DNA of 64,000 nt from Fimbriosthenelais zetlandica (GCA_977030845.1 OZ365110.1:29512001-29576000); one strand, 5' to 3'. Counted from the stretch's first letter, positions 6,427 to 63,902 are shown. Program-made: numbers and translations. The notes: generated by a model not told the origin, from the sequence alone.

Positions 6427-6615
6427 CTGTTTGGCGATGAGTTTTTGGACTCCTTGCGGGGCTGCTCTAGTAGGAGTGTTGATAGTGTGAGACTCCCCGA
6501 GTACTCTCTTCATGGACTCTTTTTGATTCATGTCAGAAAAGGGGGAGTCTAAATCGCTTGAGTTAAATGGCAGGTTCTCGTTGTTTATGAAGTCTTCACT
6601 CGTATCCAGACTCAT
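6427..6615 (-). CDS. First coding exon (63 codons, phase 0) of a gene continuing off the left edge; probably TACC family (TACC3/Maskin-like N-terminus)
   Basis: Strong acceptor (long T-rich tract, GCAG|tATG at 6617), ATG at 6615, donor CAG|GTGAAT at 6426. Peptide MSLDTSEDFINNENLPF...NTPTR...KQ resembles the TACC3/Maskin start MSL..INDEN...QTPLR. The position head-to-head with NSMCE4 mirrors vertebrate NSMCE4A-TACC2. The TACC domain is not in the window, so the identity is unproven. Confidence 0.55.
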
Positions 6616-7733
6616 ACTGCAAAAAAAGAAAAAAAAATGACAATCAGGTCAAATATGACAATTAGAATCATTGGGAAAAAAAATTGATTTAATTTTACTG
6701 ACGTGAGCCTTATGCCAATCAGATGAGCCCTTGCTTGCCAAGGTAGGGTATGAACTTAATATGAGAAATATCAAATCAATCATGGATTAGATCTCTATAC
6801 TTCAATAAATTAATCAATTGATAGGTCATTGGAATGTCACCAATCTAGGAACTGAGTCAGTGTATTGGTAATTTATGTGTAGAGAAAATTTGAAAATCAA
6901 ATCTAGGCTAGGCTAGAGCCTAGAGGCCATAATTATAGAATGATAAACTGGCCTAGCCATGGTAATACTATAATGATCATTGATGGAGCTCTCTTTTAGT
7001 TACGGTACCCGGTACCTAAACTAAAAGGTCACTCAGTCTCAGTGAATGGGCACAAAATACATGCCTCTTTGTGTCACACTCACACTATCTTTGCTCACAG
7101 TGCCAGTGGGATCAGTCTGATAATTAATGATAAATTAATGTCCCTAAATCAGCAGGCCAATTTGTAGACAGAGTATATATGCATCTCTCATCAAGGCTTG
7201 GCGAGAGATTGAAGGTAAAGTATAGGGCTGGTTATTCTGGCTGGTACGCGGTATGCAATTTGATGATCATGTCAGTTGTCACTTGCCAATGCACTAAACT
7301 TATATCTAAAGACTATGCTACTACATAAATGATCATAAATATACACAGGCCTGACAGGGCTAGCCTGTAGGCTGTAGGCCTACATCATACATGTCATACA
7401 GACGGTCTAAGACTAAGTAACTAATAATTAATACTATAGTATTACTATTCCCAAAGAGATTCATTATTGGAAGCACTTTTGACTGATATGTCTTCTATTT
7501 TTTTTGCAGTTCCATCGTAAACTCATTCACAGTGTTCTTTTTGTCCAAGTTGTAGACACGTAGTCCCCAGGCCTACCTACTATTATAGATTGAGAATGTC
7601 CACTGCACTGGCAGTGGCACAGCCAAATGTCAAATTCAAAACAACGCATTTGACAGTAATGATTCAAATAGAATGAACAGGATTGCATCATAACAATTAG
7701 AATCTTCCTCTCGGAAACTGTTTAAAACATTAC

Positions 7734-7880
7734 CTGAACTGATTTCCGTGTGGTTTACTATTCCAGGGCAAGTATTTGAAGAAAAATGTGCTGTCTGAAC
7801 TATCGAGCACGGTGCTGAATGAGTCCGCTCAAAATTTGAAACTGACCCAGTTCTTGCACTGACCTTGACCCTGTACGCAT
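7734..7880 (-). other. Probable non-coding first exon of the TACC-like gene
   Basis: Consensus donor CAG|GTAATG at 7733, immediately downstream of the ETS-containing promoter. The TSS position is approximate. Confidence 0.45.
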
Positions 7881-7963
7881 GTGCAGACGACACCGGAAGC
7901 AAAATATTTACCACTTCCGGATTTATTTGGCGGTAGCACAGCAATACAAATCAGAGGAAAGAA
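7860..7963. promoter_or_regulatory. Bidirectional promoter of TACC-like and NSMCE4 with an inverted pair of ETS/GABP sites
   Basis: CCGGAAG at 7893-7899 and ACTTCCGG at 7913-7920 in opposite orientations, an NRF1-like CGCATGTGCA at 7876-7885, and the NSMCE4 ATG 44 nt further on. Confidence 0.65.
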
Positions 7964-10900
7964 ATGGGTATGTTTATAGTTTTTCTTGATTAATTTCGCC
8001 TCAGTGTTTAAGAAGCTATCAATAGAATGATTCTTCTTTCTTTGAGTACGGTTTGTTTGACTTCATTAATATTCTTGGTATGTAAAAATGAATTCATGTC
8101 ACCTGGAGGCACGATGCCTGGCCCTGAGGACGAGGTAGCCCAAACTCTTGACTGTCTTCTCGTCAGGGGACAGTCAAGAGTTTCACAAGACTTGTGTCTA
8201 CAGTCCTGGGATGGTCCTTTTGTAGCCTAGCTAGGCCTAGGGCCTACTACTACTAGGCCTCCACGTATCCAGTAGGCCTATTGACAAACAGGCATTGCCA
8301 TTGCCATTGGTTTTAATTTTGGCGCGTGCTAATGATGATCAGATTGAATTGATTGAAAGATGAGGTCAGATTTAATAATATTCAATGTTATGAACTCGCA
8401 TTTGAACTCTAGTCTAGCCATGGCATGGACTAATGTCAAATTGGCAAAATGAAAATTCAACAAAATGTAACTTGTTAATGATAGATCTAACAGTAACAGC
8501 CTCAGGTTATAACATAAGAGGTAAAAGAATGAATTATAAAATTACAGTGGTGCCCGTAAGGATGAACAACAATTAACAAATAAAAAGAAAATAGCGGTGG
8601 CGTTACTGGCGTATCTTAGTGTTCACCAATCACTTGATGTGATTTCCCTCCTATCCGTGGCGTAGCCGTAGGAAGCGGAACATGTCTGAGTCCTGTCTTA
8701 TCTAAGATTTGTATGCCTATCTTTTACAGCAAACTCATGTGGACCCGGCGACGGGTCTCCCTACCAGGACCCGAAAGAAAGGCGAAATATCCGAAGGCAG
8801 TTCAGGGATCTGCTCCATCAAACCAAAGGTACGATATGCCCTCCATATTTGGATCCCCAAGTCTTTGCCAATGGAATTAAAATCCTAACAATTCGCTACA
8901 CAATACAATTATTTTGATTAAAAAAATATATAAAAGTACTGTGTAATAGCCTAATTTAGGCTATTCATTCAAAGGCCCCTAGCCCAAGCATATCAATAGT
9001 TTATTAATCATGTAGTAATGATTCTTTTGTTTTTAGAGAGGAAAGAAGAGCTTCTCTCCCGCGAGCATGGCCCGGCCATGTTGAACAACATGTTGAATAG
9101 AACCAACAATATCTTTTCTAATGGTAAGTTACTTTTGTGTAAATTGATTATTGAAGCACTCCCTCTGCCCTGGTCCCCCACGTTTTTTTCAAAATGAGTA
9201 TAGACCTACCTTTGTGAATATCATCTTTAACTGAAGTTTGTTTTTGTAGTGAAGATGCCTCGAGAAGCTGCACTCGATTCGCAGATTATTGCCACCCTGG
9301 CGCAGATGGGTAAACAACAAGTGCAGGCCTTACAGACAGAATTTGTTACTTTCCAACCTGTGGAATACACAGAAAAACTGGTAAATAAAATGGCCTTTTC
9401 TTTCTAGATGTTTCCCGGTGTATCAAAATTATTTCTTGATACCCGTATTATTGTTCCAGATATTGCTAGAAATTTTAACTAGCTTTGTTGCAAGTAAGCC
9501 TACTTTTCTAGATCAAATTGCCACAATTATTTTAATTTCAGTTGGGGCATTTTGGAGTTCAGCGGATGAATGAAGGTGGAGAGACAGAAGCAGTGACTGG
9601 TGAAATGTGGGAAGAACTAGGCAAAAATGTGTCTCCATGCTTCAGGAAAGCGCCAGTGCTTAACTTCTTGTATGTTTGTCTTTGTTTTTTATCGTCTCTT
9701 CATGTTAATTAGAACACTCTCATCTGTGCATTTCAAGATTAATCATTAATTTGTATAAATTGCAATATTAGATGGAACGTATTTTAAAAGCCTAGCAGGG
9801 TACGAGCTACGGTTTGCATTTGTCGCCAATTAAGAATACAATTATTGATTTGGCGATTATTGCCTTGCAGTTGGTTACAATATTGAAGAGGCACTGGGGT
9901 AGGGGTACAAGTAGGTTGGGGGGGGGGGGGGTTGTTACTGATCGTAGCTTTTGGTGGGTTCGAGGCGTAGGACGGGGCTAAGCTTTCACACCTGCAGTAA
10001 ACGCTCTCGTGCAGAGTAAAAGTGGCCAATAATCCACCGGCAATAGCCCAATAGTCGACTGAAACCACCAAAGCAGTTCATTAAACTATCTTCGAGTAAA
10101 GTAATTATTATTACAAAATTACCCCCCACCACCCACCCGGCTTCTTTCTTTTGCATTTGGCTTATAGAAGCCCAAATTGGAGACAACAATTGGTCTGCTC
10201 TTTGAGGTCTGGCTGGAGCCTTACCGCTATGTCCCTTCAATATATAATATAAGCTATGCCCTTTCAACATATAGGGCTACTGTAGTAATAACTGTCCTCC
10301 TTGCCTTCTAGGTTCGGAGCTTTTGATAGGGGACCACCTAAAGAGAAGGTCCGCGTTGAAAGACGGCAGAAGGTAAAAGACCAAGTGGCAAAGACGGCTG
10401 TCGTACCGAAACAGGTAAAGTGAATATTACACTAAGTTCAGGATCAGACTTCATTTTATGATTTAGAGAAATTTTTGAAATAAATGACTTATCTATGTTA
10501 TATTGATTCAGATAGATATGTCAAGTATAAAATAAATTGCAGGTATTGATATATTATAGGCGACACAATGGTAGGCTATACAATATTGTTTTTATTATTT
10601 TCAGATCCGAGATATCAACGATCAGGAGAAACGAGAGGCCACCACGGAGGAAGTGGAGCATATCCTAGCTTTTCTAAACCTGTATTACGAAAAGTGGGAC
10701 AGTAAGTAGAGTTTGATCATTCATATACCTCTGTAAGATAATATTGAAAATCTTTTCTTATTATACACAACTGGTAATTATTGTTCATTTGGTGTATTTA
10801 ATTTTCAGAGCAACCAATTTGTTACTTTGAGTTCGTGGTTGATCCGATGAGCTTCGGCAGAACTGTCGAGAACATATTCTACACTTCTTTTCTTGTGAGG

Positions 10901-12036
10901 GTAAGTCAGCATTCCTTTATCTAGTTTAAGTTCTTTAATTAAGTGAAGCACTCCTCATTGAAATGAGGTATACAAATTTTGAGGAATTTCAACTGAGCTC
11001 TTTAGCCAGCAGACAAACATACTGACCGACTGAAACATACTGAAGTAATTTTTCTTTTCAATAAAGCTACATTTCCGAAATCAGAAATTGTCGAAAAAAC
11101 TGTTCACCCGCTTCGAACTTTTAGATGGCGCGCATGAAGGATTTAAACATCATTAGGCTATTAATATTTCAATAAGTTAAAGTAGGACTGTTAATTCTAG
11201 GATGGCCACGTGCGTATCTTCCTTGATGACGACAAGCTGCCTGTGATAGGTAAGTTTCAATGCAATTCCTTGATATTCTGTTAGTAGAACCTCTTAGGCG
11301 CATCAGAATTGATTTCTTGTTTCCGGTTACATGGAAATTTCAAAAGAGGGTAGGTAGGTCGGGTTTTAATTTATTTATAAAAAAATTTCTATGGACCTTT
11401 TGACAGGGTAGGTAGGCTTTAAAAAACCGGAAACAAGAAATCAATTCTGATGCGCCTTGTGAAATTTCCCGGTACATCTTTAGTTTTAGTGATATGACTT
11501 TAATTTTAGGATGATACCACATAAAATCTAATTTCTTAAACTTATGAAATTTCCTGGTACTCCTTTAGTGATATAATTCTAGGATGATACCCACATAAAT
11601 GTCCTATCCCAATGGAGTTCAATTGGAGGGCGATACCCTCATAAATGTCCTACCTCAATATTATTAAATGGTGATTACAGTGTTTTCAACTCATTTACTT
11701 CAGAACCAGTACAACCGAATGAGAATGGACCGAGCGGCAGTGATTCAGCAGAGAGAAGTCAAGTGGTGCAGTCTATTACTAAAAGTGAATGGGAGGTGAG
11801 AAGATGCCGGACCTAAATTATATCTATAAATTTATATAATTAAGAAGGTCTGAAATATACCAGCTCAACGGGGCAAGGGTCTAGGGTATCTAAACATATT
11901 GCTTTTAAATTTTCAAATTATTTTATTCTGAATATGTTTTCTTGTTTCTGACATTTGTCTTTTCTAATTTTCACAGGAGATCGTGAGAATTTTTAAAATA
12001 CAGTCTGCCCTCATTCCTCTAAAGAAAAAGGCATAA
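7964..12036 (+). CDS. NSMCE4A: Non-SMC element 4 (Nse4 kleisin of the SMC5/6 complex), 11 coding exons, 313 aa
   Basis: Exons 7964-7967, 8730-8828, 9037-9123, 9250-9380, 9542-9669, 10312-10414, 10605-10701, 10809-10900, 11201-11249, 11704-11795, 11977-12036. All introns are GT-AG, phases are compatible, total 942 nt. Motifs include [22 protein letters not shown] and the Nse4_C signature [28 protein letters not shown]. Confidence 0.93.
11296..11457. mobile_element. MITE in NSMCE4 intron 9 with 33-bp perfect terminal inverted repeats
   Basis: AGGCGCATCAGAATTGATTTCTTGTTTCCGGTT (11296-11328) and its exact reverse complement (11425-11457). GGGTAGGTAGG occurs twice inside. Confidence 0.8.
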
Positions 12037-26110: not shown

Positions 26111-26146
26111 CTTCCAGAATGAGAAGTTAACTTCTCGTTCTGGAAG
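26111..26146. repeat. 36-bp near-perfect palindrome
   Basis: CTTCCAGAATGAGAAGTTAACTTCTCGTTCTGGAAG, with a single mismatched pair (T/G). Confidence 0.9.
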
Positions 26147-27519: not shown

Positions 27520-27600
27520 ATGTTGTGGGGATTCGAACCCACGAGTCTGTTAAAACTTACATCAGACTACCAGCGCCCTTGACCACTGGGCCAACGAGAA
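27520..27600 (-). pseudogene. tRNA-Leu-derived Pol III cassette (pseudo-tRNA or SINE head)
   Basis: Minus strand GTTGGCCCAGTGGTCAAGGGCGCTGG...GACTCGTGGGTTCGAATCCCCAC has an A box and a B box and aligns to tRNA-Leu (TGGCCGAGCGGTCTAAGGCGCTGG...CGTGGGTTCGAATCCCAC). The anticodon and acceptor arms are disrupted. Confidence 0.7.
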
Positions 27601-27804
27601 CAGCCGTTAGAGGTAGTAAACCAAATGGTAATATTTCCAGAACCTCCCCAACCACGGAGGTTGATTATTCTACTGACCAGACACATTCAGCTGATACATT
27701 CGGTAGTTTTTAAAAGTTTTAAATTATGAATTGATATTAAATATATTTTCCTTTTCACCGTCGCTTCTCATGTACCACAATTTGTTGAACACCAACAGAT
27801 CCAA

Positions 27805-41208: not shown

Positions 41209-41215
41209 CTTTAGG

Positions 41216-47800: not shown

Positions 47801-50800
47801 AATTCATAATCATTCCCAAATGGGAAGGGCCGCGGAAAAGAATTGTTAATATAATTCGATCACATCTTGGGGAAATAATAATAAAAGTCCAAAGGGGAAT
47901 TCATATCCATAATCAGTCATCACCCCTTCCCCCTCCCTCTCTACACCTCACCCTGATTAGATAGAGTCCCTGTATCAGTCCGGATCTCTGATGATCGCTA
48001 CCAGACCAGGCTAGCGTCCCTTATTTAAGATGCACCACTCTGAGAAGTGTTAGTACAGTTGGTCTAGGATCTTCAGTAGCGTAGGACGTGCTGGAGAAAT
48101 CTGCATACCCTAGTGGAACTAGTGTCATCAAATGTTCATCAGTTACAGGGTGAAATGACGACCATGCCATCAGAGAATTCGCCTGAAAATCAGTTCTATA
48201 GTATGTGGTATTTATATCTAAAATTATTTTTGTTATGTTAATATTTTCTCCTTTTTTTTCTAATTGCACAGTTTTCTTTTTCTTTTTTTCCGTTTAATAT
48301 ATTATAGTTTTGACATCAATCTTAAATTATCGTTTGGCTCTTTTATGAAAGGAATCATAAACTATTACCCGTGTCCGATAGACTGCGCCTGAATTCCTAC
48401 ATTAGCAGTAATTAGTAACGATCACAGAAAAAATTCTTGAATATTTATTCATACTTTATTGATTGACACATTTTTCACTGAATTGCTTTGTGAAATGAAC
48501 TAATTGAATTTCCTGTCATATTCCTGTACCTAATTTGTGCCGATTTAGACCTACCATTTTCGAGGGAAGGTAAAATATTTATATACAATCGTCCTCCAGC
48601 ATTGTAATCTGATCACTATTGGACTCAGTCGATCTGATTAACTAAACATCCTGCTTTACGTATGCTTAATGAACTGTTGAATTGAAAATGATAAATGGTT
48701 TCTTTTAAATCTACTGGTTATAGAATCAGAATTAAATTGAGGGGAATTTGATTTTGATATAAGGTTAAGAAATGCACCTATTGGTGCCTTAAATAGTCCC
48801 TTTAGTAATTTGTCCTGACTACAGTACATTTATGTAGCAGCTATAAATGGACATTTTATTGATGAAAATAGAGCTCTCTTTTCGGCTGTTTGTCCTTCGG
48901 TCAGCCTGCCGCTAGAACAGTTAACAGTGACCTCACCTCCTACCTGAGGTATGAATGAAATTAAGAGTCACCGAAACTGATTGAAGCAGGAGGGTTTTCC
49001 CAGCAGTATCGAAGCCAAAAAAGTCTTAATTAATTGAAATGTGTATTTTTTACCAAGAAAATATTACAGTAATATCCAAAGCAAGAAAATATCGTTCAGC
49101 GTCATGGCCTCTTATCGAAAAGTAACAGGTGAGAGGGATGTGATGTTACAGTAGATAATATTTATCTTTCCCCCTCTTCCTTTTGTAGATATTGTCTTAA
49201 GGAAATGTGTGTTAAGAGACCTTTAGGTCAATATTTGCACATCGTTTTATCTAGAGATATGATTGGGAATTCTTCAAGTTTTCACTTCTTTCTGAGAATG
49301 ATCTGTTTTTTCTTTATATATACCAAATGGCCATTGCAGTAGACTTCATATTTTTTGTCCACCTACTACTTGATATCATATATCGCTCTGATATCAAGAT
49401 CCATTGTATAAAGGAAGTTTGGGCTAATTTTTGGTGAATAACAATAATTAATTTTATTATTTTTTGGGTGTAAATTACAGGTGTTGCTGACTATGAAGAA
49501 CTTCTCAGGAAATATGATCAGAATCAAAAACAGGTGAGTGGTTGGAACATTTCTCTGAATGATTTAAATTGGCATTTAAGGCAGGACTCCACTGTTGCGA
49601 TTTTGCTTGCGACACTGCTGCGACAAAGGTGATACTTGTGTTGCAATGAAAAATGCACCAGTGGAGGATAACCTTAAGGCCTTGTCCACAATTTATAAAT
49701 GACATTGCGACATGAGCATCACCTTTGTCGCAGTAGTTTCGCAAGCAAAATCGCAACAGTGGAGCACCACTTTAAGCTTTATCAAATTCATACTTATTTC
49801 AACATTTCCATTTTCATCCTGGATCTGCTTTAGGCCCTTCGTCACGACGCTGGTGACAAGATTACAATAACATTCGTGATACCTTTACCTTGGATTCCCT
49901 TATTTTTGTTCAGCAGCAATAGAGATACTGTGCTTCAATCCAACCGTGGCCATGTCCATTAGGACTTGTTACCTAAGTAGCACAATATCAGAAAGTTTAG
50001 CTGTTTTTACACCATGTCCAGAGAAGACATCACACGGGTCTTTGCAAAATCCTGCCCATTATTCTTCACTTATTTGTTTAGATCTGCATTTGATATATCA
50101 TAAGCAGACAACATTAAAAAAATAATGATACAGTATATTTGACCTGGTTTTTGAGGGGTCCAAGCCGCTGGATCACAATCCTTGTTCTGTTTCTATTACA
50201 AGAGGCAAACTGCCAAGTATGACCGAGCCAGCCATGTGTAACTTGAGGAAGCTAGCAACTATAGACTTTCTCATAAGCTGGATAATATAATAAAACTGGA
50301 AAATGGGCCAAATAACTGAAAATTGACAAAAGGCTCATACTTAGTATATAGACTAAATTTTGTAACTCGTTTTATGTGACCAATAATTACTTCCCATAAT
50401 CCCATAATGATACTAAATGTTGAAAATTAGAATTGTAAGAAGTCAATTAATTAATTAAGTGTTTAAAAAAAATCTATTTCGTTGCAGTATGAAGATTTAC
50501 GACAGCGGTTGATCGAGACAGAATCGCAACTCGCCGATCTTCAGAAATGTGAGCATCAGTTGACTTTCTATATTAGCCTGCCTGTATGTTCATTTCGTGT
50601 ACAAAAAATATACAAAAAACATTGGATGTAAATGTATACTCTCCTAATCACCACTTGTTGCTAATCAATATTTTCAATTTCTCACAAATAATACGCCTTC
50701 CGTTTTATCATAGATTCATAACACAATATATCTATCTTCTTTTTGAGTGTATTTCCCCATCAATTGGATTTCCCTATAATATTCATGTACATAAATCTTG

Positions 50801-53800
50801 ACCTATTGATATAGACTATACGGGATCAGCCTATGGACGTTTTGTCTATATCAATGGAGATCTGTGTGATATCTGAACCTTTAATGAAGAATCTAATTTC
50901 TCCTTGTTAGATTTTACTGCCATATACTGACATCCTGGAATGTGATATTTCTCCCTTCCCTGTTAAATAAATATTACGTTGATAATATTTATTTTCAGTA
51001 ATGGAACCTGTGGTTGATGAATATAGTAATCTAGATCACAGGTATAACTTAGAAAAAGCATGTCGCAACCAGGCCGAGCAGTTCGCTACAAAGGTGAGCT
51101 ACCCTTTCTAACATTATATTTCGGGGCTATTGTTTTATTTCTAATTTGTTGGGAGCTACGTTACTTGGATTTGAAGTACTGTATGTACTTCCCTGGTAGC
51201 GATTACCATTCATCCCTTTATCCACCCATTCAGCCAGCCATCCAGATCTCTCACTGTGACCTCACATTTCCGTATATTAGACACGTCCATTTGTTTCAGT
51301 TCACCTCTGCCTTTTACCTTTGTCATGTATCATAAAATCTATCTCCTCAGCTGAGTAATACATTGTTTATTTGTCCCTCATTAAACATACTAAGCACCCT
51401 ACTTCTCTATCTACTCTACTTATACTGTTCTAGGTCAGGCCTATTTGCTATGGTCAGTTGGCCAAAATTCGACTTCACCTAAGCTTGAGGAAGTGGTCTA
51501 AGGGGCAATAATTGAAGATCTCTATATTAAACTTAAGGTCTACTCGCTGTCTGCGATTAGAACGCAGGACTTGGCCCAATGATGACTCCCAGTCATAATA
51601 GACCAATATCCCTATTGGCCTATTGTTCATTTGGTCACGCTTATGTTGCATACAGTGTTTCCCTTGGGGGAAGGAAGGGTGGGTTTTTTTTAGCAAAAGA
51701 ACCATGTATAACTGATGATTTGGAAGCTTAGGGAAGAACTGACGAGAAATGAAAAAGGAAGGAAAATGCAGTTGGGTGGGAAGAAATACGAGTACAATAT
51801 ATGAAGCGAGAGTAAATGGATGAAAGAGTGTCATGCACATTTCTCTATCAATACATGTGTATCATCATATATCTATATATAGTTCTATGGTATCGTATTC
51901 TCTACATCCAGAACTGGTGTATTTCATTTTTTTTTATCATTTCTATGGAGTCCCCCGCGCTTGCATCACTTAACACATTTAAGATGATTTTATATAAGTT
52001 TTATTTTGTAAGCCGGGATAAAAATTTGATACACTTCTTACTACAATACCGATGAATTGATTCCATAGTACTTTTTGTAGTATAGTATTATCTGACCCCC
52101 CTCTCTACTATCTGATAGCCCCCACCATCACCCCCCCCCCCCCTCCGGCCACTAACACCCCACCCCCCCCCCCCCCCCGACTCACAATTTAGATCCACTA
52201 TCCATGCTCTAAAATATAGCCCGACAGTATTACTCATGATAGTCATCGCTGGAAGTTCTTGGTTTAGGTAGGTGTCATATCACACGTCTATATGTCAAAA
52301 CGATTCACCGGGTCATTGTTTATAATATTTGCCATGGATTGCATATTTTCACACCAGTATTTACATTTCAGTCTCGATTTCACTTTTCTGCTTAAATAAC
52401 AGTTTGTTTGGTTGATATCTGGCTATCATGACATGTTCATGATCTCATTTGTAAAATGACGCGATGCTATACATGTATACATTTCTATATTATAATTCAT
52501 CTAATGGTGTTCACTAATGGTGTAAATTAGTAGCCTACTAGCCAGCTCTATTGTGTTTACACCACCCTCCTCTGGTTCAGCGAAATGCTCAATAGTTTGT
52601 CACACTGTGGGTGTAATAATTCTGGGTCGATTCTATCAAAGTTGATTTGTTTTCTGGTATAGATGGTTCAAGAAAACAAGAAACTGAAGCGCCAATCTCA
52701 GATGTTGGTGCAGACATTGAGTTCAGTAGAGCTGGACATCACTCAGTTACCCATGGAGGAAGAGGTCACGGAACCCCAGACCAATGGCAGCAGTAGCGAG
52801 GACCAAGTCAAGCACTTCAACGCAATGATAGAAGGTAGGAAATCCCAATATTTTAATTATTTTAGAGGATCATGTTTTAGGTGCAATAACTGTTATGTTA
52901 TGACAGATAATATGAGGTGACATGTCAATATTTTTACGACATCTAATAATTTATTTGCTCATTTGTTTCATGTAGACCTTCAAGAACAGCTTGTCAAGGC
53001 TAGGTACGAAATCCAGAAGTTAAGAGAGGAGCGAGATGAGGCAGTCTCTTCCAAGAACCTCATTGAGAAAAAGGTAGAAAATCTTAAATTGAGAATCCCA
53101 ACTTAATTCAGCTACATCAGTGATGGCTTTAAGTATGTTTAGTCCCTGTATATTCTCTTTTTAGCTTATATTCTACCACAGCTCTAAATTCGAAGTGTAG
53201 TGTATTCTTTATTTTTTTCCCTGTCCTTGCAGTATGAAGGCGAATTGCAGATGTCGGCCATGCTGCGATCATCCATAGACCACCATGAAGGCTCACTCAA
53301 ACAGTTCAAACGTGTCTCAGTCAAAGCGCAGAAAGAGTATGAGGATGTGGTCGGCAAGTACATCACAGAGAGAAAACTCAAAGAGGAGGCCGAGCGATAT
53401 GCCAGCAAGGTAGCTATTTCATTCAGGGCAAACTTTCATGAAATATGTTTTTAGGTCTAGTGCCTATCCTCACCCCCACCCCGCCCCCCAATTCAATTGA
53501 TAAATCCAGAAAACAGAAATATGGATGTTGTATTGTGGAGCTAAAATGGTACCTGCTTTCATGTGTCTATGCAAATTACTACAAATAGACTAAATTTCAT
53601 ATAATAATATTTATGCTAATATGTAGAATTATTCTTTCAACTTCATTAACAGGTATTGTCGGAGAGAGACGCCATGGCCAGGGAAAGTTCAGTGCTGATT
53701 GGTTCTGCCAACTCAGACGAGAGGCTGAGGAATGCCCTAATGGAAATAGAAGATTTGAACAAGTTGTTGGAAACTGAAAGAACTGACCACAAGCAAACGG

Positions 53801-56800
53801 TTAGGATATAAGCTTAGTGTTTCTGCAACTGTAGTCAAAATTAAGAATTGTCCAGATTATCAATTTTTCCCTTTGTTTCTACCTTTTGATTAATTGGTAT
53901 AACTAAATACCTGTTCATTTATGTCCAAAGGTGAGGGACTTGGAAGAGGAACTTAAAACTGCAGTAGAAGCCAAAGAAGTGAAAGATTTAGAAACACAGC
54001 TGATGGAAGCTAATGAACAAATTGAAGAACTGAAGAAACAGATTTCTGATGTCAACCAATGGAATGACACGCTCAACAAGAAGAGTAAGTAGAGAGATTA
54101 TTACGTGCTCTCAACTATTGGATCATAGTGACTCTACTAGTGCCTAGTTCTTACATACATGTAGTTGCATTTAGATTGTGGATCTCTTTCAAATTCAATG
54201 ACACATGCTGCATTGTTTCGGTATGGTGTTTTATGAATTAATACATCTCTGGGTTAACACCATTCATCTTTTATATTAGGGATGATAATTTATTTTTAGG
54301 ATGAATTAATTGTTAATATGAAGTAGAAATAAGAACTTTAAGATGACAAATTTAAAGTATTGTGCTATTGTGCTAGCTTTGGATAAACTCAAATACTGTG
54401 TCATAGCGTCATGTTCTGTCTGCATGTATGTACATAAACACCCGTATCTTGACTAGTTAGAAAAATTGAAGGATTAAATTTGTGACCAGAATTTCTAGTT
54501 GAATATGTATTTGAAAAATCCTTGCAGATGCGGACGTAGTTTATGATGATATTAACATTTATGAAAACTTGAAAGGTATTTAGAAACAAATAGGAAAAGA
54601 TTGGTATTTGTAAAATTGCCCCAGAATAGAGTTATTAGTGGTAGTATTCCCCATTACATGTAATCAGTATTTTTTGGGAAAGATGCGTTATTTTATTCTC
54701 TGAAGTTTTGGAATGGGAATGATCGGCAAAAGTAACGATGGCTACTGAAATCAGATAGGGTTAAATGTACAGACAAGAGTGTTTCTAAAATAGTTGCAAA
54801 TTAGAAAAATGATCAGCAGCCTATCCCTCTCCCTCTAGATCATTAGTGCATCTGCCCATCCCTCTGTTGTCTCCTCATAAATTCCCCATTTCAATCTTTC
54901 GAGCCACAGCCTATGAGTAGTTCTTATTGTTAGGGTTGGATATAAGCGTCAATGATGTTACACAGTTCTTATTTTGGGTCAAAAATGCCTTTTCTTAGAT
55001 TCGAAATGACTATTCTGGGGCACTACATTTATATAAAAAAATTTAGGTTATAGTGTAAGTTCTGCCTGTGAGGCTTTTGTGATGAGTGGTCAATCCTCAG
55101 GCTTCCCCCTTTTTAGCTTTAACGCATTTATGCATGTATTATATAGAGCTTTTGGGTACGTTCACGGTACTTAAGGTCAATACCTGATTATCTCTTCATA
55201 TAAATACACTTTTTATGCTAAAAACCTTTTACAAGTTAAAACCTGAGAATAAGAATTTATTAGTGAAATGTAAATTATTATTGTTGATATATATTGAAAA
55301 CTAATAATTATTGATTTCAACAATATTAATAAGCGCTTTTATTAGTTTTATATCGATTCATTAGTTTCGTACATCTGTTCTTTAAGATAATGAACTGGAG
55401 AACCGACTGGATGTTGCGTCTCAAAAGCTGGATATAGCTGAACAGAAGTTACGGCCCCCTCCACCCCCACCTCCACCTCCACTTCCACCCGCAGGACTGT
55501 TCTCGTATGTGTCTGTTAAACTCTTTAACTATTTTCTACTTATTTCCCACCACCTGACTCACTCCTGTATGACAACTTCACTTTCTCAAAAATAATCTCT
55601 TCTGTTTTAGACCTCTAAAAAAGCTGATCAAGCAGTCAAAACCAGGACCTAAATCTTCAGGCAAACCACCAGGTAGGATAAAATAAGTCTATAAGATTAT
55701 ATCTGAATTATATGTTACTGTCTCCTTTGTAGCATAAATTCCTCATTTTACATCTGACTGTTTATTTTGAACTTCTTCTCAGATCCGAGTCAACAGAAGT
55801 ATGAGGATGCTCTGAAGGAAATGATGAATAGAATCAAGACAGGGAACACACTACGTCCTGCGGCTCAAAGACGGGTAGGTGTTTCCTAAAAAAACAGAAC
55901 ACAATGTAGTTTCAATCTAGTATGCAAGGTAGTAACAGATAAGGGAGGGATGGAGAAGGAAAAGGTTAGATCAGTTTTCGTCTGGTCATCGCGTTAACGA
56001 CACAGATTTAGCTAATTTAGCGGGGGGGGGGGGGGGGGTGGGAGGGAGTATTTTACCTTTTGCTGTTGTTTTTAGCCAGCCCTCGCATACTAAATCCTGC
56101 CTCCTTAATGCATCAGGTTTTTGCTTGGTGCCAAGGAAATAGCTTATGAATTTTAGTCCTTGGTCTAACGTATTTTGTCGAATTTTCCTGCTATTGCTTC
56201 ACTGGAAGGCTGAAGAAGAGGTTGGGCTTAACTTTTTTTTATTGCACAAGATTCCCCTTTGTAATGAATTAGTCTATCTTTATTGTATGTACAATTTATA
56301 CTATTTTATAAGTATGCACAGGGAAGTTTCGAGGCCTGTTGGTTTTATTCATTGCTTGCATGTACCGTTACATTTTGAATATTTAACTGGATTGAATTTC
56401 GGTGGATCCTTTTTAATGCATGGAGAGGTTTTGAGAAATATTCCTTACTAGTCATGATGTTTTCAGACTTTTCCTTTCCCTCCCATGAATGTGTATGAAT
56501 TTGCTGATTTTGTGGATACAAATTTGCAACTATCCTCTATCCAGAATGTAGCTTATAGAGGGAGGAAACCAGTAAGTAAAACAGATAGAACCGTGCATAA
56601 TAACTCCCCCTCAGTCTGCATTGCTTTATAGCAACCTGTATCATCGCATCTGCCCTGGAGTAGAGATGTGAATTCAACGGACTAAATGTTGATAATGTGT
56701 GTTTGCATTAGTTGCTCCAAAATGTACAGCCATTTATAGATTGATCAGACCTGCACTCTTGATTAGTGTAGTCCCTAAATCTAATAGTAGTCCTAACAAA

Positions 56801-59684
56801 GTCAGCTTTCATTTTCAAGAGGTGTACTCTCTTGGAAAAATCATCATCGTCTTGTCTGTCTTGTATTTTTTTAATTTTATTTACATTGCTTCACTTCATC
56901 TTGTCCCACCAATTTGTGAATTGGCAATTGTATTTTATAGAGACCTGGTATTCCGGCTGATTTCAAATTGAGACGAAATGTAAGGTCATTAAATTAAGGA
57001 CATAATATATGAATTATATCATTTCTAAAGCTGATGACACACCTTTGAAATACTGGGTTTATATGAATAAGTTAACCAAGCAAAACTTATTAAACATAAG
57101 CCTTTCATTTCTGACCCTAAAATTGTTTTCCTAAGATGGTGTTTAACCTGTTTTGCCAAGTGTCATTACATGTTAGAATAGCATGTTCACACTAATCCAA
57201 CATGCTTCAGGTGTCTGTGTCTCCATTTACTGCTTGAGTCTCCTCTTCACAAGGATTTGACAGAAAAGTGTCGGGCCTACTGATTTTTATTTCTTCATAA
57301 ATTTAGCCCATTAATTCTTTTTTCCGTTGTTACTTGATATTTTATGCATGGTTCATTGGATTGTTTTCTTTCGTGTTCACCAAAGATTGAAATGTGTTGT
57401 ATATCATGGAATAGCTTTTGTTCAAAATAAGCATCCTAGAAATTTTGTTTTGTTTAAAATTCAATTTTGACATAGCGGCTAGTTTTAATGATGTCATGCC
57501 TTTTAATTGCAAGTTAATAATTACACCTTAAATGGAAGCTTTTAATATGGTAGTTCAACTTCAACACCTCATCCTAAGTCCACCATTTCAGCTTCATTCC
57601 CATTGTTGACTTCTGATTAGAATGAATGACATCAACTTTGATCAAAATGGGATATTCTTCATTACTATAACCTATATCGTACTTTGAAGAATATACTATA
57701 AATAAGCATAGATAATGCGTTGTATGCTATGATCAGATGTAGTTGGAATACTAAAAGCTGTGTTATCCTTTTAACCTATAATATTAACGCAATCCAACTT
57801 GATGCAGTTATTAATGCACTACAATTTGCTGAACATTTGACAGCACTGTTGAGTCAATATGTACCTAGACTATTAAGCGTACACGAAATACCCCTATTAA
57901 TGTAATTAACATCTGCATTTTGTACCCTTTGAGTGCACTTTACACCTGAATGTACCTGTATATCGGATTGGTTACACTGTGGAACGTGACCATGACTCAT
58001 TTGTTTGGTCGTCAATGAAATATAGTCTGATTATTATAAATTTATTTTCAATGTGCAGTTAAAGTAACTTTGTCACAGAATTTTAAAAAATCGATAAAAT
58101 TGGTTTAGAGTACTGAGACCTGAGAGTGTCTAATGACAATGAATCGTGCTGTATTAAAGTTTTCATACCCGATACTTTCAGCCGTCACTTCCTGATTTGA
58201 ACCCTAAAGATAGCTCAGGAAACTCAGCAATGGGGGAGCTCAATTCTATATTGGTATGTAAATTGTAATCACTTCTCTCTGTTGTTACTTAGGTCCTTCC
58301 ATTCGCATTTCGTTCTCTCAATTTCTCAGATTTCCTTAAGTGTTACAAATGCACAAATTATGATTTTATGAGTAAAAAATCTTTTTTCACAGACTCACAT
58401 TAAAGCAAACCGGTCTATGTCTACGGGCAACCTCTTCGAAGACAAGAATTCGTCAGGAGAGATTAGTGAGCTCCATGCTGCCTATCTCCGCATTCAAGGC
58501 AACAAAAAGAATGCCAATCTTGACCAACAACAGTGGCATGCAGGCGATCCACCCAACCGTAACCTCTCACTAATTGAGGAGGAGGAAGAGAAGGAGAGTT
58601 TGAGGTAGGCAGTTGAAATTCTTAGTATGACCTCTATTCTCTTTTAAGTTATAAATTAGTTTGATTTAAGGAAAAAAATCTCTGAGAAATGTGGCTGCCT
58701 ACATGCCTAAATCAGGTCTGTCCCAAAATGTACAAGAGGTATCGCTTTTCGATTAGTTGCAAATTTAAAAGTGATGGGCTTGAACATAGACCTCCTAAAC
58801 AGATTGCTATGAAAGAGTTGGATGATTGTAATTTACTTCTGTGTTAACTTCTGTTGCTTCTGATGGAAACCACTGTTTCACCTACAGCCCTCGACCAAGC
58901 CCAAGCATTCAGTAATGATATAGAATGGTGAACATCATCGTACTTTATCTCTTAAAGCAATTTACTATAGACTTCTTACACTCTCACAGTATCTACCACT
59001 GCTTTTCATTTTCTAACTATAATGCACTATCTTGCACTGACTTGAGTCCTACACCGATATATCTGGGGTTCAGGAGGTAGCTTGGTATCTACTTTCCAAA
59101 TTAGACCCTCCTTTATCCATGTACCAATAAATTTTATCAGGGAAAAGGGAGTTTGTGCCTCCTAGCACTAGTCTTTATGCCATAAAACTGCACTTCTGGA
59201 CCCACCCTGGTGTGGCCAGTGACAGTTTCACAACCATAACTTAGATGCTTACCTACTTAACTCAACTCCGGTAAACTTTGCATTGGTTGGTGATCATGGT
59301 CTTGGGTATTTCTGCCATTTTTCTTTCCTTGATATTGACAAATGCGGTGCTCAATATAACCTTATAATTCGAATATTCTTATCCTGAATTAGTTTATAGT
59401 TATGTAAGGAGATTCGACAATTTATAAATGTCTTATTTATGAATTTTATTGCAAATGTAATATAGCTCTACTTGTATACAAATACATACTACTACATGTA
59501 TCCCTATTAGCATTTATTAGTTTTTCTAGTAAATTCGCCGTAGTGAATATTTATTTTTTGTGAATTTTTCAATTTCAGTTCACAGTCTAGTAGAGAAAAG
59601 ATTGATAGTCGACGTAAAATTTCGCCCGTTTCAGAGGAGGGAATGAATGAGCAGCCCAGGCGGTTGGAATCAAGCTATCTCTGA
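44632..59684 (+). CDS. SHTN1: Shootin-1 (coiled coil, polyproline and WH2-like segment), 14 core coding exons, 547 aa
   Basis: Exons 44632-44728, 49481-49533, 50488-50548, 50999-51093, 52663-52834, 52976-53073, 53233-53409, 53653-53799, 53931-54084, 55387-55504, 55611-55672, 55783-55874, 58393-58604, 59579-59684. All introns are GT-AG and in frame, total 1644 nt. Motifs match human shootin-1: LEKACRNQAEQFATK~IEKTCRESAEALATK, ENKKLKRQS, PPPPPPPPPLPP and ALKEMMNRIKTGNTLRP~AVEEMMDRIKKGVHLRP. Confidence 0.9.
49580..49771. mobile_element. MITE in SHTN1 intron 2, ~50-bp terminal inverted repeats, TTAA flanks
   Basis: CTCCACTGTTGCGATTTTGCTTGCGACACTGCTGCGACAAAGGTGAT and the inverted ATCACCTTTGTCGCAGTAGTTTCGCAAGCAAAATCGCAACAGTGGAG. 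TTAA at 49576-49579 and 49772-49775. Confidence 0.8.
56545..56571 (+). CDS. Candidate 27-nt symmetric microexon of SHTN1 (NVAYRGRKP)
   Basis: CCTCTATCCAG|AAT...CCA|GTAAGT. Phase 0-0 matches the flanking introns, there is no stop, and a TGC lies ~18 nt upstream of the acceptor. Confidence 0.55.
58888..58911 (+). CDS. Candidate 24-nt symmetric microexon of SHTN1 (SPRPSPSI), or a stop-containing alternative exon
   Basis: TTTCACCTACAG|C CCT...ATT CA|GTAATG. Phase 2-2 matches the flanking exons. Read-through past the donor gives CAG TAA. Confidence 0.5.
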
Positions 59685-60746: not shown

Positions 60747-60959
60747 GAGCCTTTGCATAAGATTGTATATGAAGTCTATAAGAATAGTTTCTATTATTCA
60801 TATTCCACAGGCAATAATACTGCCTTGTATGTGGAGGAATATCCAGCATAAGATTTGTTATTCATTCATTGATGTTTTCCTGAAATCCATCTAAATGAAA
60901 AGTTTTGCTTCCATAAAATGTCTAGCCAAAATAAACAACAAGATTGAAATAGGCTCAGT

Positions 60960-60965
60960 TTTATT
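60960..60965 (-). terminator. Likely ENO4 polyadenylation signal
   Basis: AATAAA on the minus strand ~180 nt after the ENO4 stop. Confidence 0.55.
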
Positions 60966-61142
60966 AACTGAAAACGAGTTAATCTTATATTATAGTTCAT
61001 CTTATATTATATAATTTAAAAATATCACAGGCCATCAAATTGACAATGAGGCTAACGTGGTCTCTACTCGAGTTTCAGTCCAAGATGGGAGAGAATTTCA
61101 ATGAATCATGATGGATCAATGAGTGATGAATGATCTCTGTGT

Positions 61143-63902
61143 TTATTTTTTCTTGGCTGGTGATTCATCCTTCTCTGCACCTTCACCTTCCTCCTCGGGT
61201 GGTGGGGGTGGGGGCTCTATGTGGGGGAAGGCGTGGGCTTGTTGAGATCCAAGCAGACCTTCAGATTCGAGCTCGGCTTCTATTTGGATCAGGCGATTCA
61301 TTTTCATGACTCGTTCGCCCCTACAGGGTGCACCTAGCTTAACAAACTTGGCACCAGCCCCCACAGCCTGTAAAGGGAAAACAATAAATTCACTTTGAGA
61401 AACATAATACGAGATGGTTAAGTTTTGAGGGAAGCCAATACCAACGCATATATCTTGGTAGAAATTCCACATTGACATCAAAATATAGTAACTTTGGAGA
61501 CAAGTACGTTTCTTGAAAATTATTTTGCCTCTGTGATGAAATGAGATTTACCAGTTCCACCAGGAAGGTATCTGGGCTTTCCCCGACACTTGTGGTCATC
61601 ATTATGGTGTTATCTGCTTCTATAAATCAAAGAATAAGTTTACATTAATTTCACTTACTTTTTATCCCAAGTGTCAAGTTTATCTAAAAGCCTAATTTAT
61701 ATTTCAAAATGACCTAATGACCTCGGAATTATGTCACAACTAAGGAAATTGACCTTATTTACCTTCCATCTTCTTTGAAGCCTCCAGTATGTCTGATATA
61801 GAGTTGATCATCTCTATTTTAAACACTGTTCCACTGGTTTTAAAGTCCTCGGCTATTTCCTCGTTTTTCAGCAGTCCGGGTCTGTGGTAGACGACGTCCC
61901 CGATCACCAAACATTGATCGGAGATTTTTTCACAAAGCTTCATCCACGATTCTTTGTCCTAATAAATCACGATCAGAATACAACCATAACATTATGTTTT
62001 CCACAATTCAAATTTGAAATATCTCAATTACAACCCATTCAGTTAATCATTCCTAGCTGATTTCTATCGGGTTAGAATTCGGCTGTTACCTGTTTCCTCA
62101 TGGGGTCGATTAAACCAATGATTGCAGGGTATCGTGTTTTAAGGTCTGCCCAATACTCGATCAGGTCCTCCCCACTTTTCAGCACACCAGTCATTACTTC
62201 ATACTTCCCTTTCTCCTGCAAAAGAATTGCACTGGTTAATGAGATTATTCTCCGGTACGAACATTGAAAAGTCTTGAAAACTTCAATAAACTGAGGTTTT
62301 CATAAAATAGGTACCCAATACTCACAAAATCAAAACATTCCTGTAGTCCACAGTTGAGTATAAAGTGTACATCCTCTCCAGGTGTTAACTCCAGGGCAGT
62401 GAGGGCCTCCTGGATGAGGTCCAGTGCCATCTCTGGCTTCTCCAGAGCTGGACAGAGGGCACCACAGTCTGAGACCAGGCGGGCTGAAACCTGAAATATG
62501 TCGAGAGAGACCAACTTAAATATTTGAGATGATCTGTAGCAACCCTGAAGTAAATCCCTCAAATTAAAGTACCAAATGGCAACGTAAATATTATACATGT
62601 AGTGCCATTCAAATAACCAACATGCAAACCTGCATTGTGCTCCCTACAGATCTAGGTAAATCGTTTCTATGTGTACTAAATTAGATTAACTACGAAGAGC
62701 CCTTCTATAGTTAAATATGTGAAGGCGCTAGAATCAGAAATGAATATTAGATCTATTTCTATCAGCTTCAGGTTCAATTCAGATATAAAGGCAAAGAATT
62801 TAGAAGCCAATTTTGTCAGGTAAAGCCTATTATTTCCAAGCCTTTTCTGCACACATGTTAACAAATTTTAATTGTATAAAGAATGGTTGAGCTAACTAAG
62901 ATGGATGGGTGCTATGTATTGGTATAATGGAATCATATCGACTTACTTTTCCCTGTTGGTTTGAAAATGGAAATGCTCATGAGTTGAGAGTGCCATAGGC
63001 AAACAGAGTATAATGTTTAAATATAATTTCATAATGTTAGATTATAAGGAATGAATAGAAAACATTTCTTTTGATGACAGGGGAAATAACAGTAGTCAGT
63101 CATAAAAAAATGTCCACTTACCCCAGCTTTAGAAGTGAGTGACCTTGTCACACTGGTGTAGATGTTGTTCATCATCTTCATACTCTGAAAATGTTGCCAA
63201 AATATATGAGATGCAAGTCAAGCCTTCAAATAATACATCTTTAGAGAAACTGTCCTGTTTTAATGAACATGAAGGTTTGAATGCACGGAGGCTTGAATTT
63301 TACTAGAAGTGAATAGTTTACCTCTTTTAATGCCATGCCTGGTTTGGGAACTAGCATGTATTCCTTCACACAGTTACATTTGCCGGGGTAGGCGCGTCCA
63401 CCCGAGATAATGGTCACTACTGGAAGGGGCATTACAAAGCTGCCTGGATCCTGGTAAGACAGACAAATGGAGTCTTCTGTCAATATCATAAACAATACTT
63501 TTGCATTGTGCGGGAAGAAATGGCACCTTTGTATTGAAATCTATAAGGTGCAGATATTAATATTGTTTATCGGAGATTTGGATGGAGAACATTTCTTTGT
63601 CTTGTATGTGTAATTTTAGTGTGGTCAATGAAAAACATCAAGATTAACATTCAGCTGAAATTTCGATTGTTCTAAGAGTAACTTAAGCAAATAGAAATGT
63701 GTTAATAATTTAATGAAATCTGTTACTCACACTGCCATGTTTCAGTGCAGCTATGTGTTTGTAGACGGGTTTGCTAGCCACCACTGCCCCGGCCTCACAC
63801 ACTGCCTTGGATAAAGCACTGATGGCATCAGATCCTGGGAACAACTTCTCCCGGGGCTCATCAGGGATGACCACAACGGCGGCTCCCCCTTTACCCTTAC
63901 CT
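61143..63902 (-). CDS. ENO4: Enolase 4 (divergent, sperm/cilia-type enolase), last seven coding exons; 5' end outside the window
   Basis: Exons 63902-63731, 63450-63322, 63184-63122, 62490-62326, 62215-62090, 61958-61763, 61619-61552 and 61367-61143 (eight segments counting the terminal one), all GT-AG and in frame. Enolase-fold motifs with ENO4-type divergence: KPVYKHIAALKH~KPLYLNIALLKH, MPLPVVTIISGG and DTFLVELAVGAGAKFVKLGAPCRGERVMKMNRLIQIEAEL. Confidence 0.95.

What the first reader, a model, noticed from the sequence alone, without database searches (positions are those of the whole stretch)
6427..63902. Five-gene block with the same order and orientation as human chr10q25-26, compressed into 64 kb
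Read from right to left the window is ENO4> <SHTN1 nanos> <NSMCE4 TACC-like>. From memory, human chr10 reads ENO4(+) SHTN1(-) ... NANOS1(+) ... NSMCE4A(-) TACC2(+). That is the same order and strand pattern, including the tail-to-tail ENO4/SHTN1 pair and the head-to-head NSMCE4A/TACC2 pair. In human the genes are spread over megabases with VAX1, EMX2, FGFR2 and others in between. If correct, this is a compact ancestral-type deuterostome microsynteny block linking a germline regulator to cilia/sperm, axon-growth, SMC5/6 and spindle genes, and it would argue that this nanos is the NANOS1-locus ortholog.
Basis: partly seen in the sequence, partly recalled or inferred. Interest (0 to 1): 0.8.

Follow-up and report, generated by a model that had tools for sequence, protein, structure and literature searches.

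The report
Ancient gene neighbourhood shared with human 10q
Five unrelated genes (TACC, NSMCE4, nanos, a shootin-like gene and an enolase-4-like gene) lie side by side in what is a protostome, probably annelid, genome, in the order and relative orientation of their counterparts on human chromosome 10q25-26; this is best read as an old bilaterian gene neighbourhood, not a deuterostome one.

Summary
The gene row is real. Tools confirm nanos (41216-42217, -), NSMCE4 (about 8.7-11.8 kb, +) and a divergent enolase that is the only one in the genome (61146 to beyond the right edge, -). A TACC domain lies on the minus strand, 22-23 kb left of the window. The fifth gene (44632-58605, +) has the shootin build: coiled coils, a polyproline tract and a C-terminal motif. 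No tool could name it.

The human order SHTN1...NANOS1...NSMCE4A-TACC2 is confirmed from a published gene list. ENO4's position and all five human strands rest on memory.

Three corrections:
- The block spans about 90 kb, not 64.
- An orphan open frame of 3,640 codons sits between the putative TACC first exon and the TACC domain, so the TACC gene model is unresolved.
- The genome is a protostome, with mir-2 clusters and annelids as the closest named Kir channel matches, so "deuterostome block" is wrong.

New support: nanos sits head-to-head with the shootin-like first exon in two hemichordates and in a distant relative of this genome. MCMBP and BCCIP lie on the same chromosome but 19-20 Mb away, so the tight colinear block stands out from scrambled macrosynteny.

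It is a new instance of a known phenomenon and moderately interesting. The scan had not reported it on other DNA.

The parts
6427..6648 (-). The rest of the gene lies left of the window.
   Evidence: Open frame 6409-6648 on the - strand with an ATG; no Pfam hit. TACC_C domain on the same strand at window -23153..-22287. Between them lie a repeat-bearing 569-codon frame at -20228..-18522 and a 3,640-codon frame at -16255..-5336. The link from this exon to the TACC domain is inferred, not shown.
6649..8689 (.). Divergent (head-to-head) spacer of about 2 kb between the putative TACC first exon and the first recognised NSMCE4 exon.
   Evidence: Coordinates of the flanking exons. Promoter function is inferred only.
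8690..11813 (+). NSMCE4 (Nse4 kleisin of the SMC5/6 complex), multi-exon. The start codon was not located and may lie a little upstream.
   Evidence: Nse4-Nse3_bdg E 1.4e-4 (9231-9404) and Nse4_C E 2.8e-13 (10802-10921); only Nse4_C match in the genome; PDB matches human EID3 E 1.9e-10 and yeast Nse4 E 5.8e-7; exon frames.
26100..29490 (.). Recently active interspersed repeat in the NSMCE4-nanos spacer. It is not part of the conserved block.
   Evidence: At least 39 copies genome-wide at 97-100% identity over 2.2 kb, one over 3.3 kb. It overlaps the composite repeat noted in s1-183040.
41216..42217 (-). nanos, single coding exon (first ATG at 42217; end coordinate includes the stop).
   Evidence: zf-nanos E 2.9e-24 at residues 260-312 of the frame; 102 homologs, all carrying PF05741; zebrafish and Drosophila Nanos structures; start position agrees with the relative's gene.
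42218..44631 (.). Divergent spacer of about 2.4 kb between the nanos ATG and the ATG of the shootin-like gene.
   Evidence: Coordinates. The same head-to-head arrangement occurs in Glandiceps (2.3 kb), Ptychodera (about 6 kb) and relative A (8.8 kb).
44632..58605 (+). Shootin-like gene. Conserved first coding exon at 44632-44730. Coiled-coil exons start near 50467, 50986, 52663, 52921, 53188, 53650 and 53907. Polyproline exon at 55386, then a C-terminal motif exon at 55758. Probable last coding exon at 58372-58605.
   Evidence: Exon frames. Exon 1 aligns across four genomes (A1). The exon at 53188 has 88% and 47% identical exon fragments in other assemblies. No Pfam family. The resemblance to human SHTN1 is recalled from memory only.
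61146..64000 (-). ENO4-like divergent enolase, 3' two-thirds. It is tail-to-tail with the shootin-like gene (about 2.5 kb apart). The 5' exons continue to about 66995, outside the window.
   Evidence: Enolase_C E 3.7e-6 and weak Enolase_C and Enolase_N matches on further exons; PDB enolases at E 7e-7 or weaker; Atlas gives Enolase_C in all 100 hits; canonical enolases are elsewhere; 5' exons.

Best explanation
This is a retained ancestral bilaterian gene neighbourhood. In a protostome (probably annelid) chromosome, five functionally unrelated genes lie in a row of about 90 kb: TACC(-), NSMCE4(+), nanos(-), a shootin-like gene(+) and an ENO4-like enolase(-).

Read from the other strand, this is the order and relative orientation of ENO4, SHTN1, NANOS1, NSMCE4A and TACC2 on human 10q25.3-q26.13. 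There the same genes are spread over about 5.4 Mb with some forty other genes between them.

The row is built from three tight junctions:
- two head-to-head pairs with spacers of 2-2.4 kb (TACC/NSMCE4 and nanos/shootin-like);
- one tail-to-tail pair 2.5 kb apart (shootin-like/ENO4-like).

Inferred mechanism: such junctions (shared divergent promoter regions, closely abutting 3' ends) are hard to break without damaging a gene. The pairs therefore persisted, and the loose nanos-NSMCE4 link of 29 kb simply was not broken in either lineage. In the vertebrate line other genes and much non-coding DNA were inserted between the pairs without inversion.

Shown: gene identities for four of the five, their order and strands here, the human order, and conservation of the nanos/shootin-like junction in hemichordates.

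Inferred: shootin orthology, the human strands, the unity of the TACC gene model, and any regulatory constraint.
For: Gene identities:
- nanos.
- NSMCE4.
- TACC_C on the expected strand in the left flank.
- A single divergent enolase against two canonical copies elsewhere.
- The shootin-like architecture is read directly from the exon frames.

Human order from PMC10340279.

Cross-phylum test: the first coding exon of the shootin-like gene is conserved and lies head-to-head with nanos in Ptychodera flava, Glandiceps talaboti and relative A (alignment A1, nine invariant columns). In relative B the nanos homolog and a homolog of a shootin-like exon are on one 402.6 kb contig. In relative A a Kir channel gene lies upstream of nanos on the same strand, as here (282 kb against 68 kb).

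Background: the single-copy 10q26 markers MCMBP and BCCIP are on the same contig C10 but 19-20 Mb away, and ATE1 is on another contig. Chromosome-scale linkage is scrambled while the five genes stay adjacent and colinear. Given co-location, one of 60 orders and one of 16 orientation patterns would match by chance.

No Pfam domain was found in the ten longest open frames of the spacers.
Against: - Shootin identity could not be tested with any library and rests on motifs recalled from human SHTN1.
- ENO4 subfamily membership, as opposed to 'divergent enolase', also rests on exclusion and memory.
- Human strands and ENO4's position are from memory.
- The putative TACC first exon is linked to the TACC domain only by strand and position. 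The 3,640-codon frame between them has no homolog and no domain and could be a separate gene. That would break the strict NSMCE4/TACC head-to-head pairing.
- Only one of the four junctions was tested outside this lineage.
- nanos loci of Patella, Nematostella and Trichoplax show no Nse4, enolase or TACC neighbour within 10 kb.
- The spacers were checked only through long open frames, so short-exon genes could have been missed.
- The genome holds a second nanos and a second TACC_C locus, and no gene trees were possible.
Confidence: 0.65

Rival explanations
1. Only the tight gene pairs are ancestral: nanos/shootin-like, perhaps NSMCE4/TACC and shootin/ENO4. The whole-block colinearity with human is a coincidence among genes that merely share an ancestral linkage group.
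For: Macrosynteny exists independently of the block: MCMBP and BCCIP are on the same contig. The nanos-NSMCE4 link is a loose 29 kb spacer holding a young transposon family. Only the nanos/shootin-like junction is shown in another phylum.
Against: With three pairs on one chromosome, matching both the order and all orientations of the human arrangement still has a chance of a few percent at most. The three pairs also lie within 90 kb of a 57 Mb contig, far closer than MCMBP and BCCIP (19-20 Mb).
Confidence: 0.2
2. The block is partly a misreading. Either the coiled-coil gene is not a shootin ortholog, or the giant open frame is an independent gene between NSMCE4 and TACC. In either case the match to human is a four-gene or interrupted match.
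For: No tool named the coiled-coil gene. Toriyama et al. 2006 reported that no invertebrate shootin homologs were found (PMC2064506). The giant frame begins with its own ATG, has no homologs and no domains.
Against: The exon frames show two copies of a coiled-coil unit, a polyproline tract and a C-terminal basic motif in the order I recall for SHTN1. The gene sits tail-to-tail with the ENO4-like gene, as SHTN1 does in human (memory). The giant frame is on the TACC strand, has a possible acceptor just before its ATG and several good donors near its end, and recalls the very large exon of the long human TACC2 isoform (memory).
Confidence: 0.12
3. Pure coincidence or convergent assembly: five adjacent genes happen to have human counterparts in the same order.
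For: The comparison was made after the fact by a reader looking for a pattern. Human strands are from memory.
Against: All five human counterparts fall within about 5.4 Mb of one chromosome arm in colinear order (for four of them) with matching relative orientation. One junction is demonstrably older than the protostome-deuterostome split.
Confidence: 0.03

Closest known systems
Human 10q25.3-q26.13 interval (ENO4, SHTN1 ... NANOS1 ... NSMCE4A, TACC2)
   Same: Same five gene families, same order (for four of them) and, from memory, the same relative orientation, including the tail-to-tail ENO4/SHTN1 and head-to-head NSMCE4A/TACC2 pairs.
   Different: About 90 kb here against about 5.4 Mb in human. 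None of the intervening human genes was seen in the block, and ATE1 is on another contig here. MCMBP and BCCIP are on the same contig but 19-20 Mb away.
Conserved ancient microsynteny blocks of metazoans (Irimia et al. 2012, PMC3514665)
   Same: Adjacent, functionally unrelated genes kept together across phyla, often as tight head-to-head pairs.
   Different: I could not check whether any of these pairs is in that survey, because its supplementary tables are not held. None of the five is a classic developmental transcription factor with a bystander gene, so the regulatory-block explanation is not evident here.
FGFR-TACC paralogous regions of vertebrates (human 10q26, 4p16, 8p11; from memory)
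   Same: TACC genes mark an old, duplicated chromosomal neighbourhood, and TACC2 belongs to the 10q26 copy.
   Different: No FGFR-type gene was looked for or seen in the 264 kb examined. The block described here extends in the other direction, through NSMCE4 to nanos, shootin and ENO4.

Membership tests
Nanos | C-terminal tandem CCHC zinc-finger domain (Pfam zf-nanos) | tested here: met
   PF05741 E 2.9e-24, 85.5 bits against a cut-off of 27, profile 1-53 of 54; zebrafish Nanos 3ALR E 2.6e-20.
Nanos | Orthology to vertebrate NANOS1 rather than NANOS2 or NANOS3, or to the genome's second nanos | not tested
   No vertebrate sequences were retrieved and no tree was built. A second zf-nanos locus exists on C13. 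The best named full-length matches are hemichordate nanos and cnidarian Nanos2.
NSMCE4 / Nse4 (SMC5/6 kleisin) | Nse3-binding helix region and Nse4 C-terminal winged-helix domain | tested here: met
   PF15412 E 1.4e-4 (22.3 bits on a single exon, just under the 23-bit whole-protein cut-off) and PF08743 E 2.8e-13 (50.3 bits against a cut-off of 26); PDB EID3 and yeast Nse4; single match in the genome.
TACC | C-terminal TACC coiled-coil domain (Pfam TACC_C) | tested here: met
   PF05010, 56.2 bits, E 8.1e-13, plus two further exon matches, at window -23153..-22287 on the - strand, outside the window.
TACC | The exon at 6427-6648 belongs to the same transcript as the TACC domain | not testable with these tools
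   No sequencing run was listed. The giant intervening frame has no homologs. Splice signals are compatible but not decisive.
ENO4 (enolase 4) | Enolase fold (Enolase_N and Enolase_C) | tested here: met
   Enolase_C E 3.7e-6 over the cut-off on the last exon; weak Enolase_C and Enolase_N on three other exons; PDB enolases; Atlas Enolase_C in 100 of 100 hits.
ENO4 (enolase 4) | Membership of the divergent ENO4 clade, with an extra N-terminal region, rather than the glycolytic enolases | tested here: inconclusive
   It is far more divergent than the two canonical copies (exon scores of 13-27 bits against 50-133 bits). An extra 5' coding exon at 66804-66995 has no Pfam hit. No ENO4 reference sequence could be obtained; the resemblance to human ENO4 is from memory.
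Shootin (SHTN1) | Three coiled-coil regions followed by one proline-rich region (PMC2064506) | tested here: met
   Exon frames show coiled-coil exons from 50.4 to 54.1 kb and a run of nine prolines at 55386-55592. The architecture is described. This feature is not specific to the family.
Shootin (SHTN1) | Significant sequence similarity to vertebrate shootins | tested here: inconclusive
   A whole-library HMMER search with the 53188 exon found only unnamed exon fragments and no vertebrate protein at E <= 0.001. No Pfam model exists. Only single exons could be searched.
Conserved microsynteny block | Same adjacency and orientation in at least two distant phyla besides vertebrates | tested here: inconclusive
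   Met for the nanos/shootin-like junction: this protostome and two hemichordates. Not testable for NSMCE4/TACC, shootin/ENO4 and nanos-NSMCE4, because no orthologs from other species could be fetched. Negative within 10 kb of nanos in Patella, Nematostella and Trichoplax.

The most novel reading that the evidence does not exclude
[quoted passage not shown] Its core would be a nanos/shootin divergent gene pair. That would also show that shootin is an old bilaterian gene, not the late vertebrate addition proposed when it was discovered.
Probability: 0.5. Interest if true: 0.55.

Novelty: new member of a known kind. Interest (0 to 1): 0.45.

Why it matters
Blocks of unrelated genes that keep both order and orientation across the protostome-deuterostome split are uncommon outside clusters such as Hox.

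- They give positional evidence for orthology where sequence is weak. Here that applies to the fast-evolving nanos N-terminus, the shootin family (reported in 2006 to lack invertebrate homologs) and the sperm- and cilia-associated ENO4.
- The block gives a concrete, compact locus for asking whether divergent promoters (nanos/shootin, NSMCE4/TACC) or abutting 3' ends constrain gene order.
- It supplies an anchor for reconstructing the ancestral state of the human 10q25-26 region and its paralogous regions.

It does not reveal a new kind of system.

Tried and rejected
- **Naming the shootin-like gene.** Pfam on twelve exon frames gave nothing specific. The single whole-library HMMER job, on exon 53188-53451, gave two exon fragments and one junk repeat protein. 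The ESM Atlas gave generic coiled-coil clusters. The PDB gave chance hits to designed armadillo repeats and nothing else. A full-text search for recalled SHTN1 peptides found nothing.
- **Full-length orthologs.** Multi-exon genes could not be retrieved, because the protein search accepts only candidates of similar length to the query and spliced proteins have no reference.
- **Giant 3,332-residue frame.** No homolog and no Pfam domain, so it neither confirmed nor refuted membership in TACC.
- **TACC-domain exon against the PDB.** Only spectrin-repeat noise.
- **Sequencing runs.** None was listed, so there is no transcript evidence.
- **Relative B.** No DNA was served.
- **Walking along relative A's contig.** Blocked because the leftmost called gene starts with GTG, so a reference does not reproduce its product.
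- **Literature.** No paper describes this block. Irimia 2012's supplements are not held.
- **Rejected idea.** That the near-identical copy of window 1-3000 on C39 signals a duplicated block. Nse4 has a single match, neither nanos locus is on C39, and that stretch has many partial copies elsewhere, so it is a repeat.
Full report
**Where the window lies.** The window is contig C10, bases 29,512,001-29,576,000, of a 447 Mb assembly in 79 contigs. It has no gaps. I added 100 kb of flank on each side and worked in window coordinates, with negative numbers to the left.

**The five genes**

- **nanos.** A single open frame on the minus strand. The first ATG is at 42217 and the stop at 41216. It carries the Nanos zinc-finger domain (E 2.9e-24). 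It matches 102 proteins that all carry that domain, and it matches the zebrafish and fly Nanos structures.
- **NSMCE4.** Small plus-strand exons between about 8.7 and 11.8 kb. One exon matches the Nse3-binding region (E 1.4e-4) and another the Nse4 C-terminal domain (E 2.8e-13). The best solved relative is human EID3, followed by yeast Nse4. It is the only such match in the genome.
- **The enolase.** Minus-strand exons from 61146 to 63955, continuing to about 66995 beyond the right edge. Their matches to Enolase_C and Enolase_N are real but weak. The same holds against solved enolases and Atlas clusters. The only other Enolase_C matches are two canonical tandem copies on contig C25, with exon scores of 50-133 bits. 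This is therefore the one divergent enolase, with an extra 5' coding exon that has no Pfam match. That is what ENO4 looks like, but I could bring no ENO4 reference into the session. The subfamily call rests on exclusion and on my memory of the human protein.
- **TACC.** Nothing inside the window is recognisably TACC. The TACC domain is found on the same strand at -23153..-22287, at 56 bits, over the cut-off. Upstream of it lie a motif typical of TACC proteins as I recall them and a 569-codon frame full of short acidic repeats.
  - A complication: a 3,640-codon open frame lies on the same strand between the putative first exon and the repeat exon, at -16255..-5336.
  - It has no Pfam domain and no homolog among 8,000 scored candidates.
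  - It has its own ATG, preceded by a possible splice acceptor, and several good donors near its end.
  - It may be a giant TACC exon, as in the long human TACC2 isoform (memory), or a separate orphan gene. No sequencing run was listed, so this stays open.
- **The shootin-like gene.** Plus-strand exons run from 44632 to about 58605. They comprise a short first coding exon, seven coiled-coil exons containing two copies of a recognisable unit, an exon with nine consecutive prolines, and an exon with a basic motif that I recall from the C-terminal part of SHTN1.
  - Published shootin architecture is three coiled coils plus one proline-rich region (PMC2064506).
  - No tool could name the gene. Pfam has no family for it. 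The Atlas and the PDB gave only generic coiled-coil or chance matches.
  - I rate shootin identity at about 75%, by inference.

**The human side.** A published table of genes deleted in a 10q25.3-q26.2 patient lists them in chromosomal order: HSPA12A, KIAA1598 (SHTN1), VAX1, KCNK18, SLC18A2, PDZD8, EMX2, RAB11FIP2, CASC2, PRLHR, NANOS1, EIF3A ... WDR11, FGFR2, ATE1, NSMCE4A, TACC2, PLEKHA1 (PMC10340279). That confirms the order for four genes. I found no paper stating the strands.

**What kind of animal this is.** A note from another agent of this scan suggested an annelid, so I tested the point.

- The genome has tandem clusters of mir-2 hairpins above Rfam's gathering score on contig C19. 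mir-2 arose on the protostome stem and is absent from deuterostomes (PMC3384581).
- A single-exon Kir channel gene in the right flank has as its closest named relatives Helobdella and Capitella (62% identity) and Paralvinella (59%). Molluscs and nemerteans follow. No invertebrate deuterostome is among the best 120; the only vertebrate entry, a carp protein, is at 43% identity.
- The animal is a protostome, most likely an annelid. "Deuterostome microsynteny" is therefore wrong, and a match to human implies an arrangement at least as old as the bilaterian ancestor.

**Is any of it conserved elsewhere?** I could only start from nanos, the one gene searchable at full length.

- In Ptychodera flava the gene just upstream of nanos, on the opposite strand, encodes 905 residues with no Pfam family.
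- In Glandiceps talaboti a 633-residue gene with no Pfam family overlaps the nanos locus on the opposite strand.
- In both, a short ATG-initiated frame lies head-to-head with nanos and aligns with the first coding exon of the window's shootin-like gene. The same is true in a contig of a distant relative (relative A, nanos 39% identical). Alignment A1 has nine invariant columns over about 33 residues.
- The spacing is 2.4 kb here, 2.3 kb in Glandiceps, about 6 kb in Ptychodera and 8.8 kb in relative A.
- A second Ptychodera exon resembles the window's second exon only weakly.
- In relative B the nanos homolog and a homolog of the 53188 exon are on one 402.6 kb contig.
- In relative A the Kir gene lies upstream of nanos on the same strand, as here, at 282 kb instead of 68 kb.
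- The nanos/shootin-like junction therefore predates the protostome-deuterostome split.
- nanos loci of Patella, Nematostella and Trichoplax show no Nse4, enolase or TACC neighbour within 10 kb. The Nematostella upstream neighbour is an unannotated coiled-coil gene whose relation to shootin I could not judge.
- The NSMCE4/TACC and shootin/ENO4 junctions could not be tested in other species.

**Background linkage.** Three single-copy human 10q26 genes were located in this genome. MCMBP lies at C10:48.70 Mb and BCCIP at C10:9.00 Mb, on the same 57 Mb contig but 19-20 Mb from the block. ATE1, the immediate human neighbour of NSMCE4A, is on contig C27. The chromosome thus shows the usual picture of retained linkage with scrambled order. 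Against that, five adjacent colinear genes stand out. Given co-location, one of 60 orders and one of 16 orientation patterns would match by chance.

**The spacers.** The ten longest open frames between NSMCE4 and nanos have no family match. Part of that spacer (26.1-29.5 kb) is a repeat with at least 39 copies at 97-100% identity. Short-exon genes could have been missed.

**Verdict.**
- The statement that this nanos is the NANOS1-locus ortholog is a positional argument only. There is a second nanos on C13, and no tree was possible.
- Conserved microsynteny is a known phenomenon (PMC3514665). I found no report of this block, so I class it as a new member of a known kind, of moderate interest.

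Noticed in passing
left flank, window -16255..-5336 (- strand); L028:3-9998:- covers most of it: An uninterrupted open frame of 3,640 codons starting with its own ATG. It has no Pfam domain and no homolog in the 5.8-billion-protein collection. It is either a giant TACC exon or an orphan gene for a very long, probably disordered protein.
   Followed up: partly
left flank, window -20228..-18522 (- strand); L030:3772-5478:-: A 569-codon frame with about 15 tandem copies of a unit of roughly 30 residues built around a D-P-F-K-T motif, just upstream of the TACC domain. It may be a repeat region for binding an adaptor or clathrin-type partner.
   Followed up: no
window 26100-29490: An interspersed repeat of 2.2 kb (one copy 3.3 kb) with at least 39 copies at 97-100% identity on many contigs, so a very recently active mobile element. 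It overlaps the composite tRNA-derived/Penelope repeat of note s1-183040.
   Followed up: partly
left flank, window about -51000..-36000: About 15 kb of tandem or low-complexity satellite that reads open in several frames on both strands, between the TACC 3' end and a clarin-like gene.
   Followed up: no
left flank, window -64585..-64175 (- strand), L009:5415-5825:-: A clarin-like gene (PF25807, E 2.7e-7) beyond TACC. From memory, human CLRN3 lies distal to TACC2 on 10q26.2 and CLRN2 lies on 4p with TACC3, so this could be a sixth colinear member of the old neighbourhood.
   Followed up: no
G000:C10:4228026-4228749 (+), loci L003 and L004: A second TACC_C-bearing locus 25 Mb away on the same contig (three exon matches, summed score over the cut-off), so this genome has two TACC genes.
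   Followed up: no
G000:C13:19960549-19960710 (+): A second nanos zinc-finger locus (88.9 bits) in an open frame of only 115 codons. Its neighbours could not be fetched.
   Followed up: no
G000:C25:4123166-4131860 (+): Two canonical enolase genes in tandem, about 7 kb apart.
   Followed up: no
G000:C19:26618391-26619505 and C19:19186297-19191356: Two mir-2 clusters: one of about four hairpins and one of about eleven evenly spaced hairpins, roughly 160 bases apart. The second is a large tandem expansion.
   Followed up: no
right flank, window 109449-111008 and 138231-140579 (- strand): Two single-exon inward-rectifier potassium channel genes 29 kb apart. The second has an N-terminal extension of about 400 residues with no domain match.
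   Followed up: partly
window 573-3000: This stretch, inside the putative first TACC intron, has a 99% copy on C39 and 73-93% partial copies on C37, C11, C1 and C10, so it is a repeat family rather than unique sequence.
   Followed up: no
left flank, window -85208..-83726 (+ strand): A CDC25-type phosphatase gene (M-inducer_phosp E 1.1e-20, Rhodanese E 1.1e-12).
   Followed up: no
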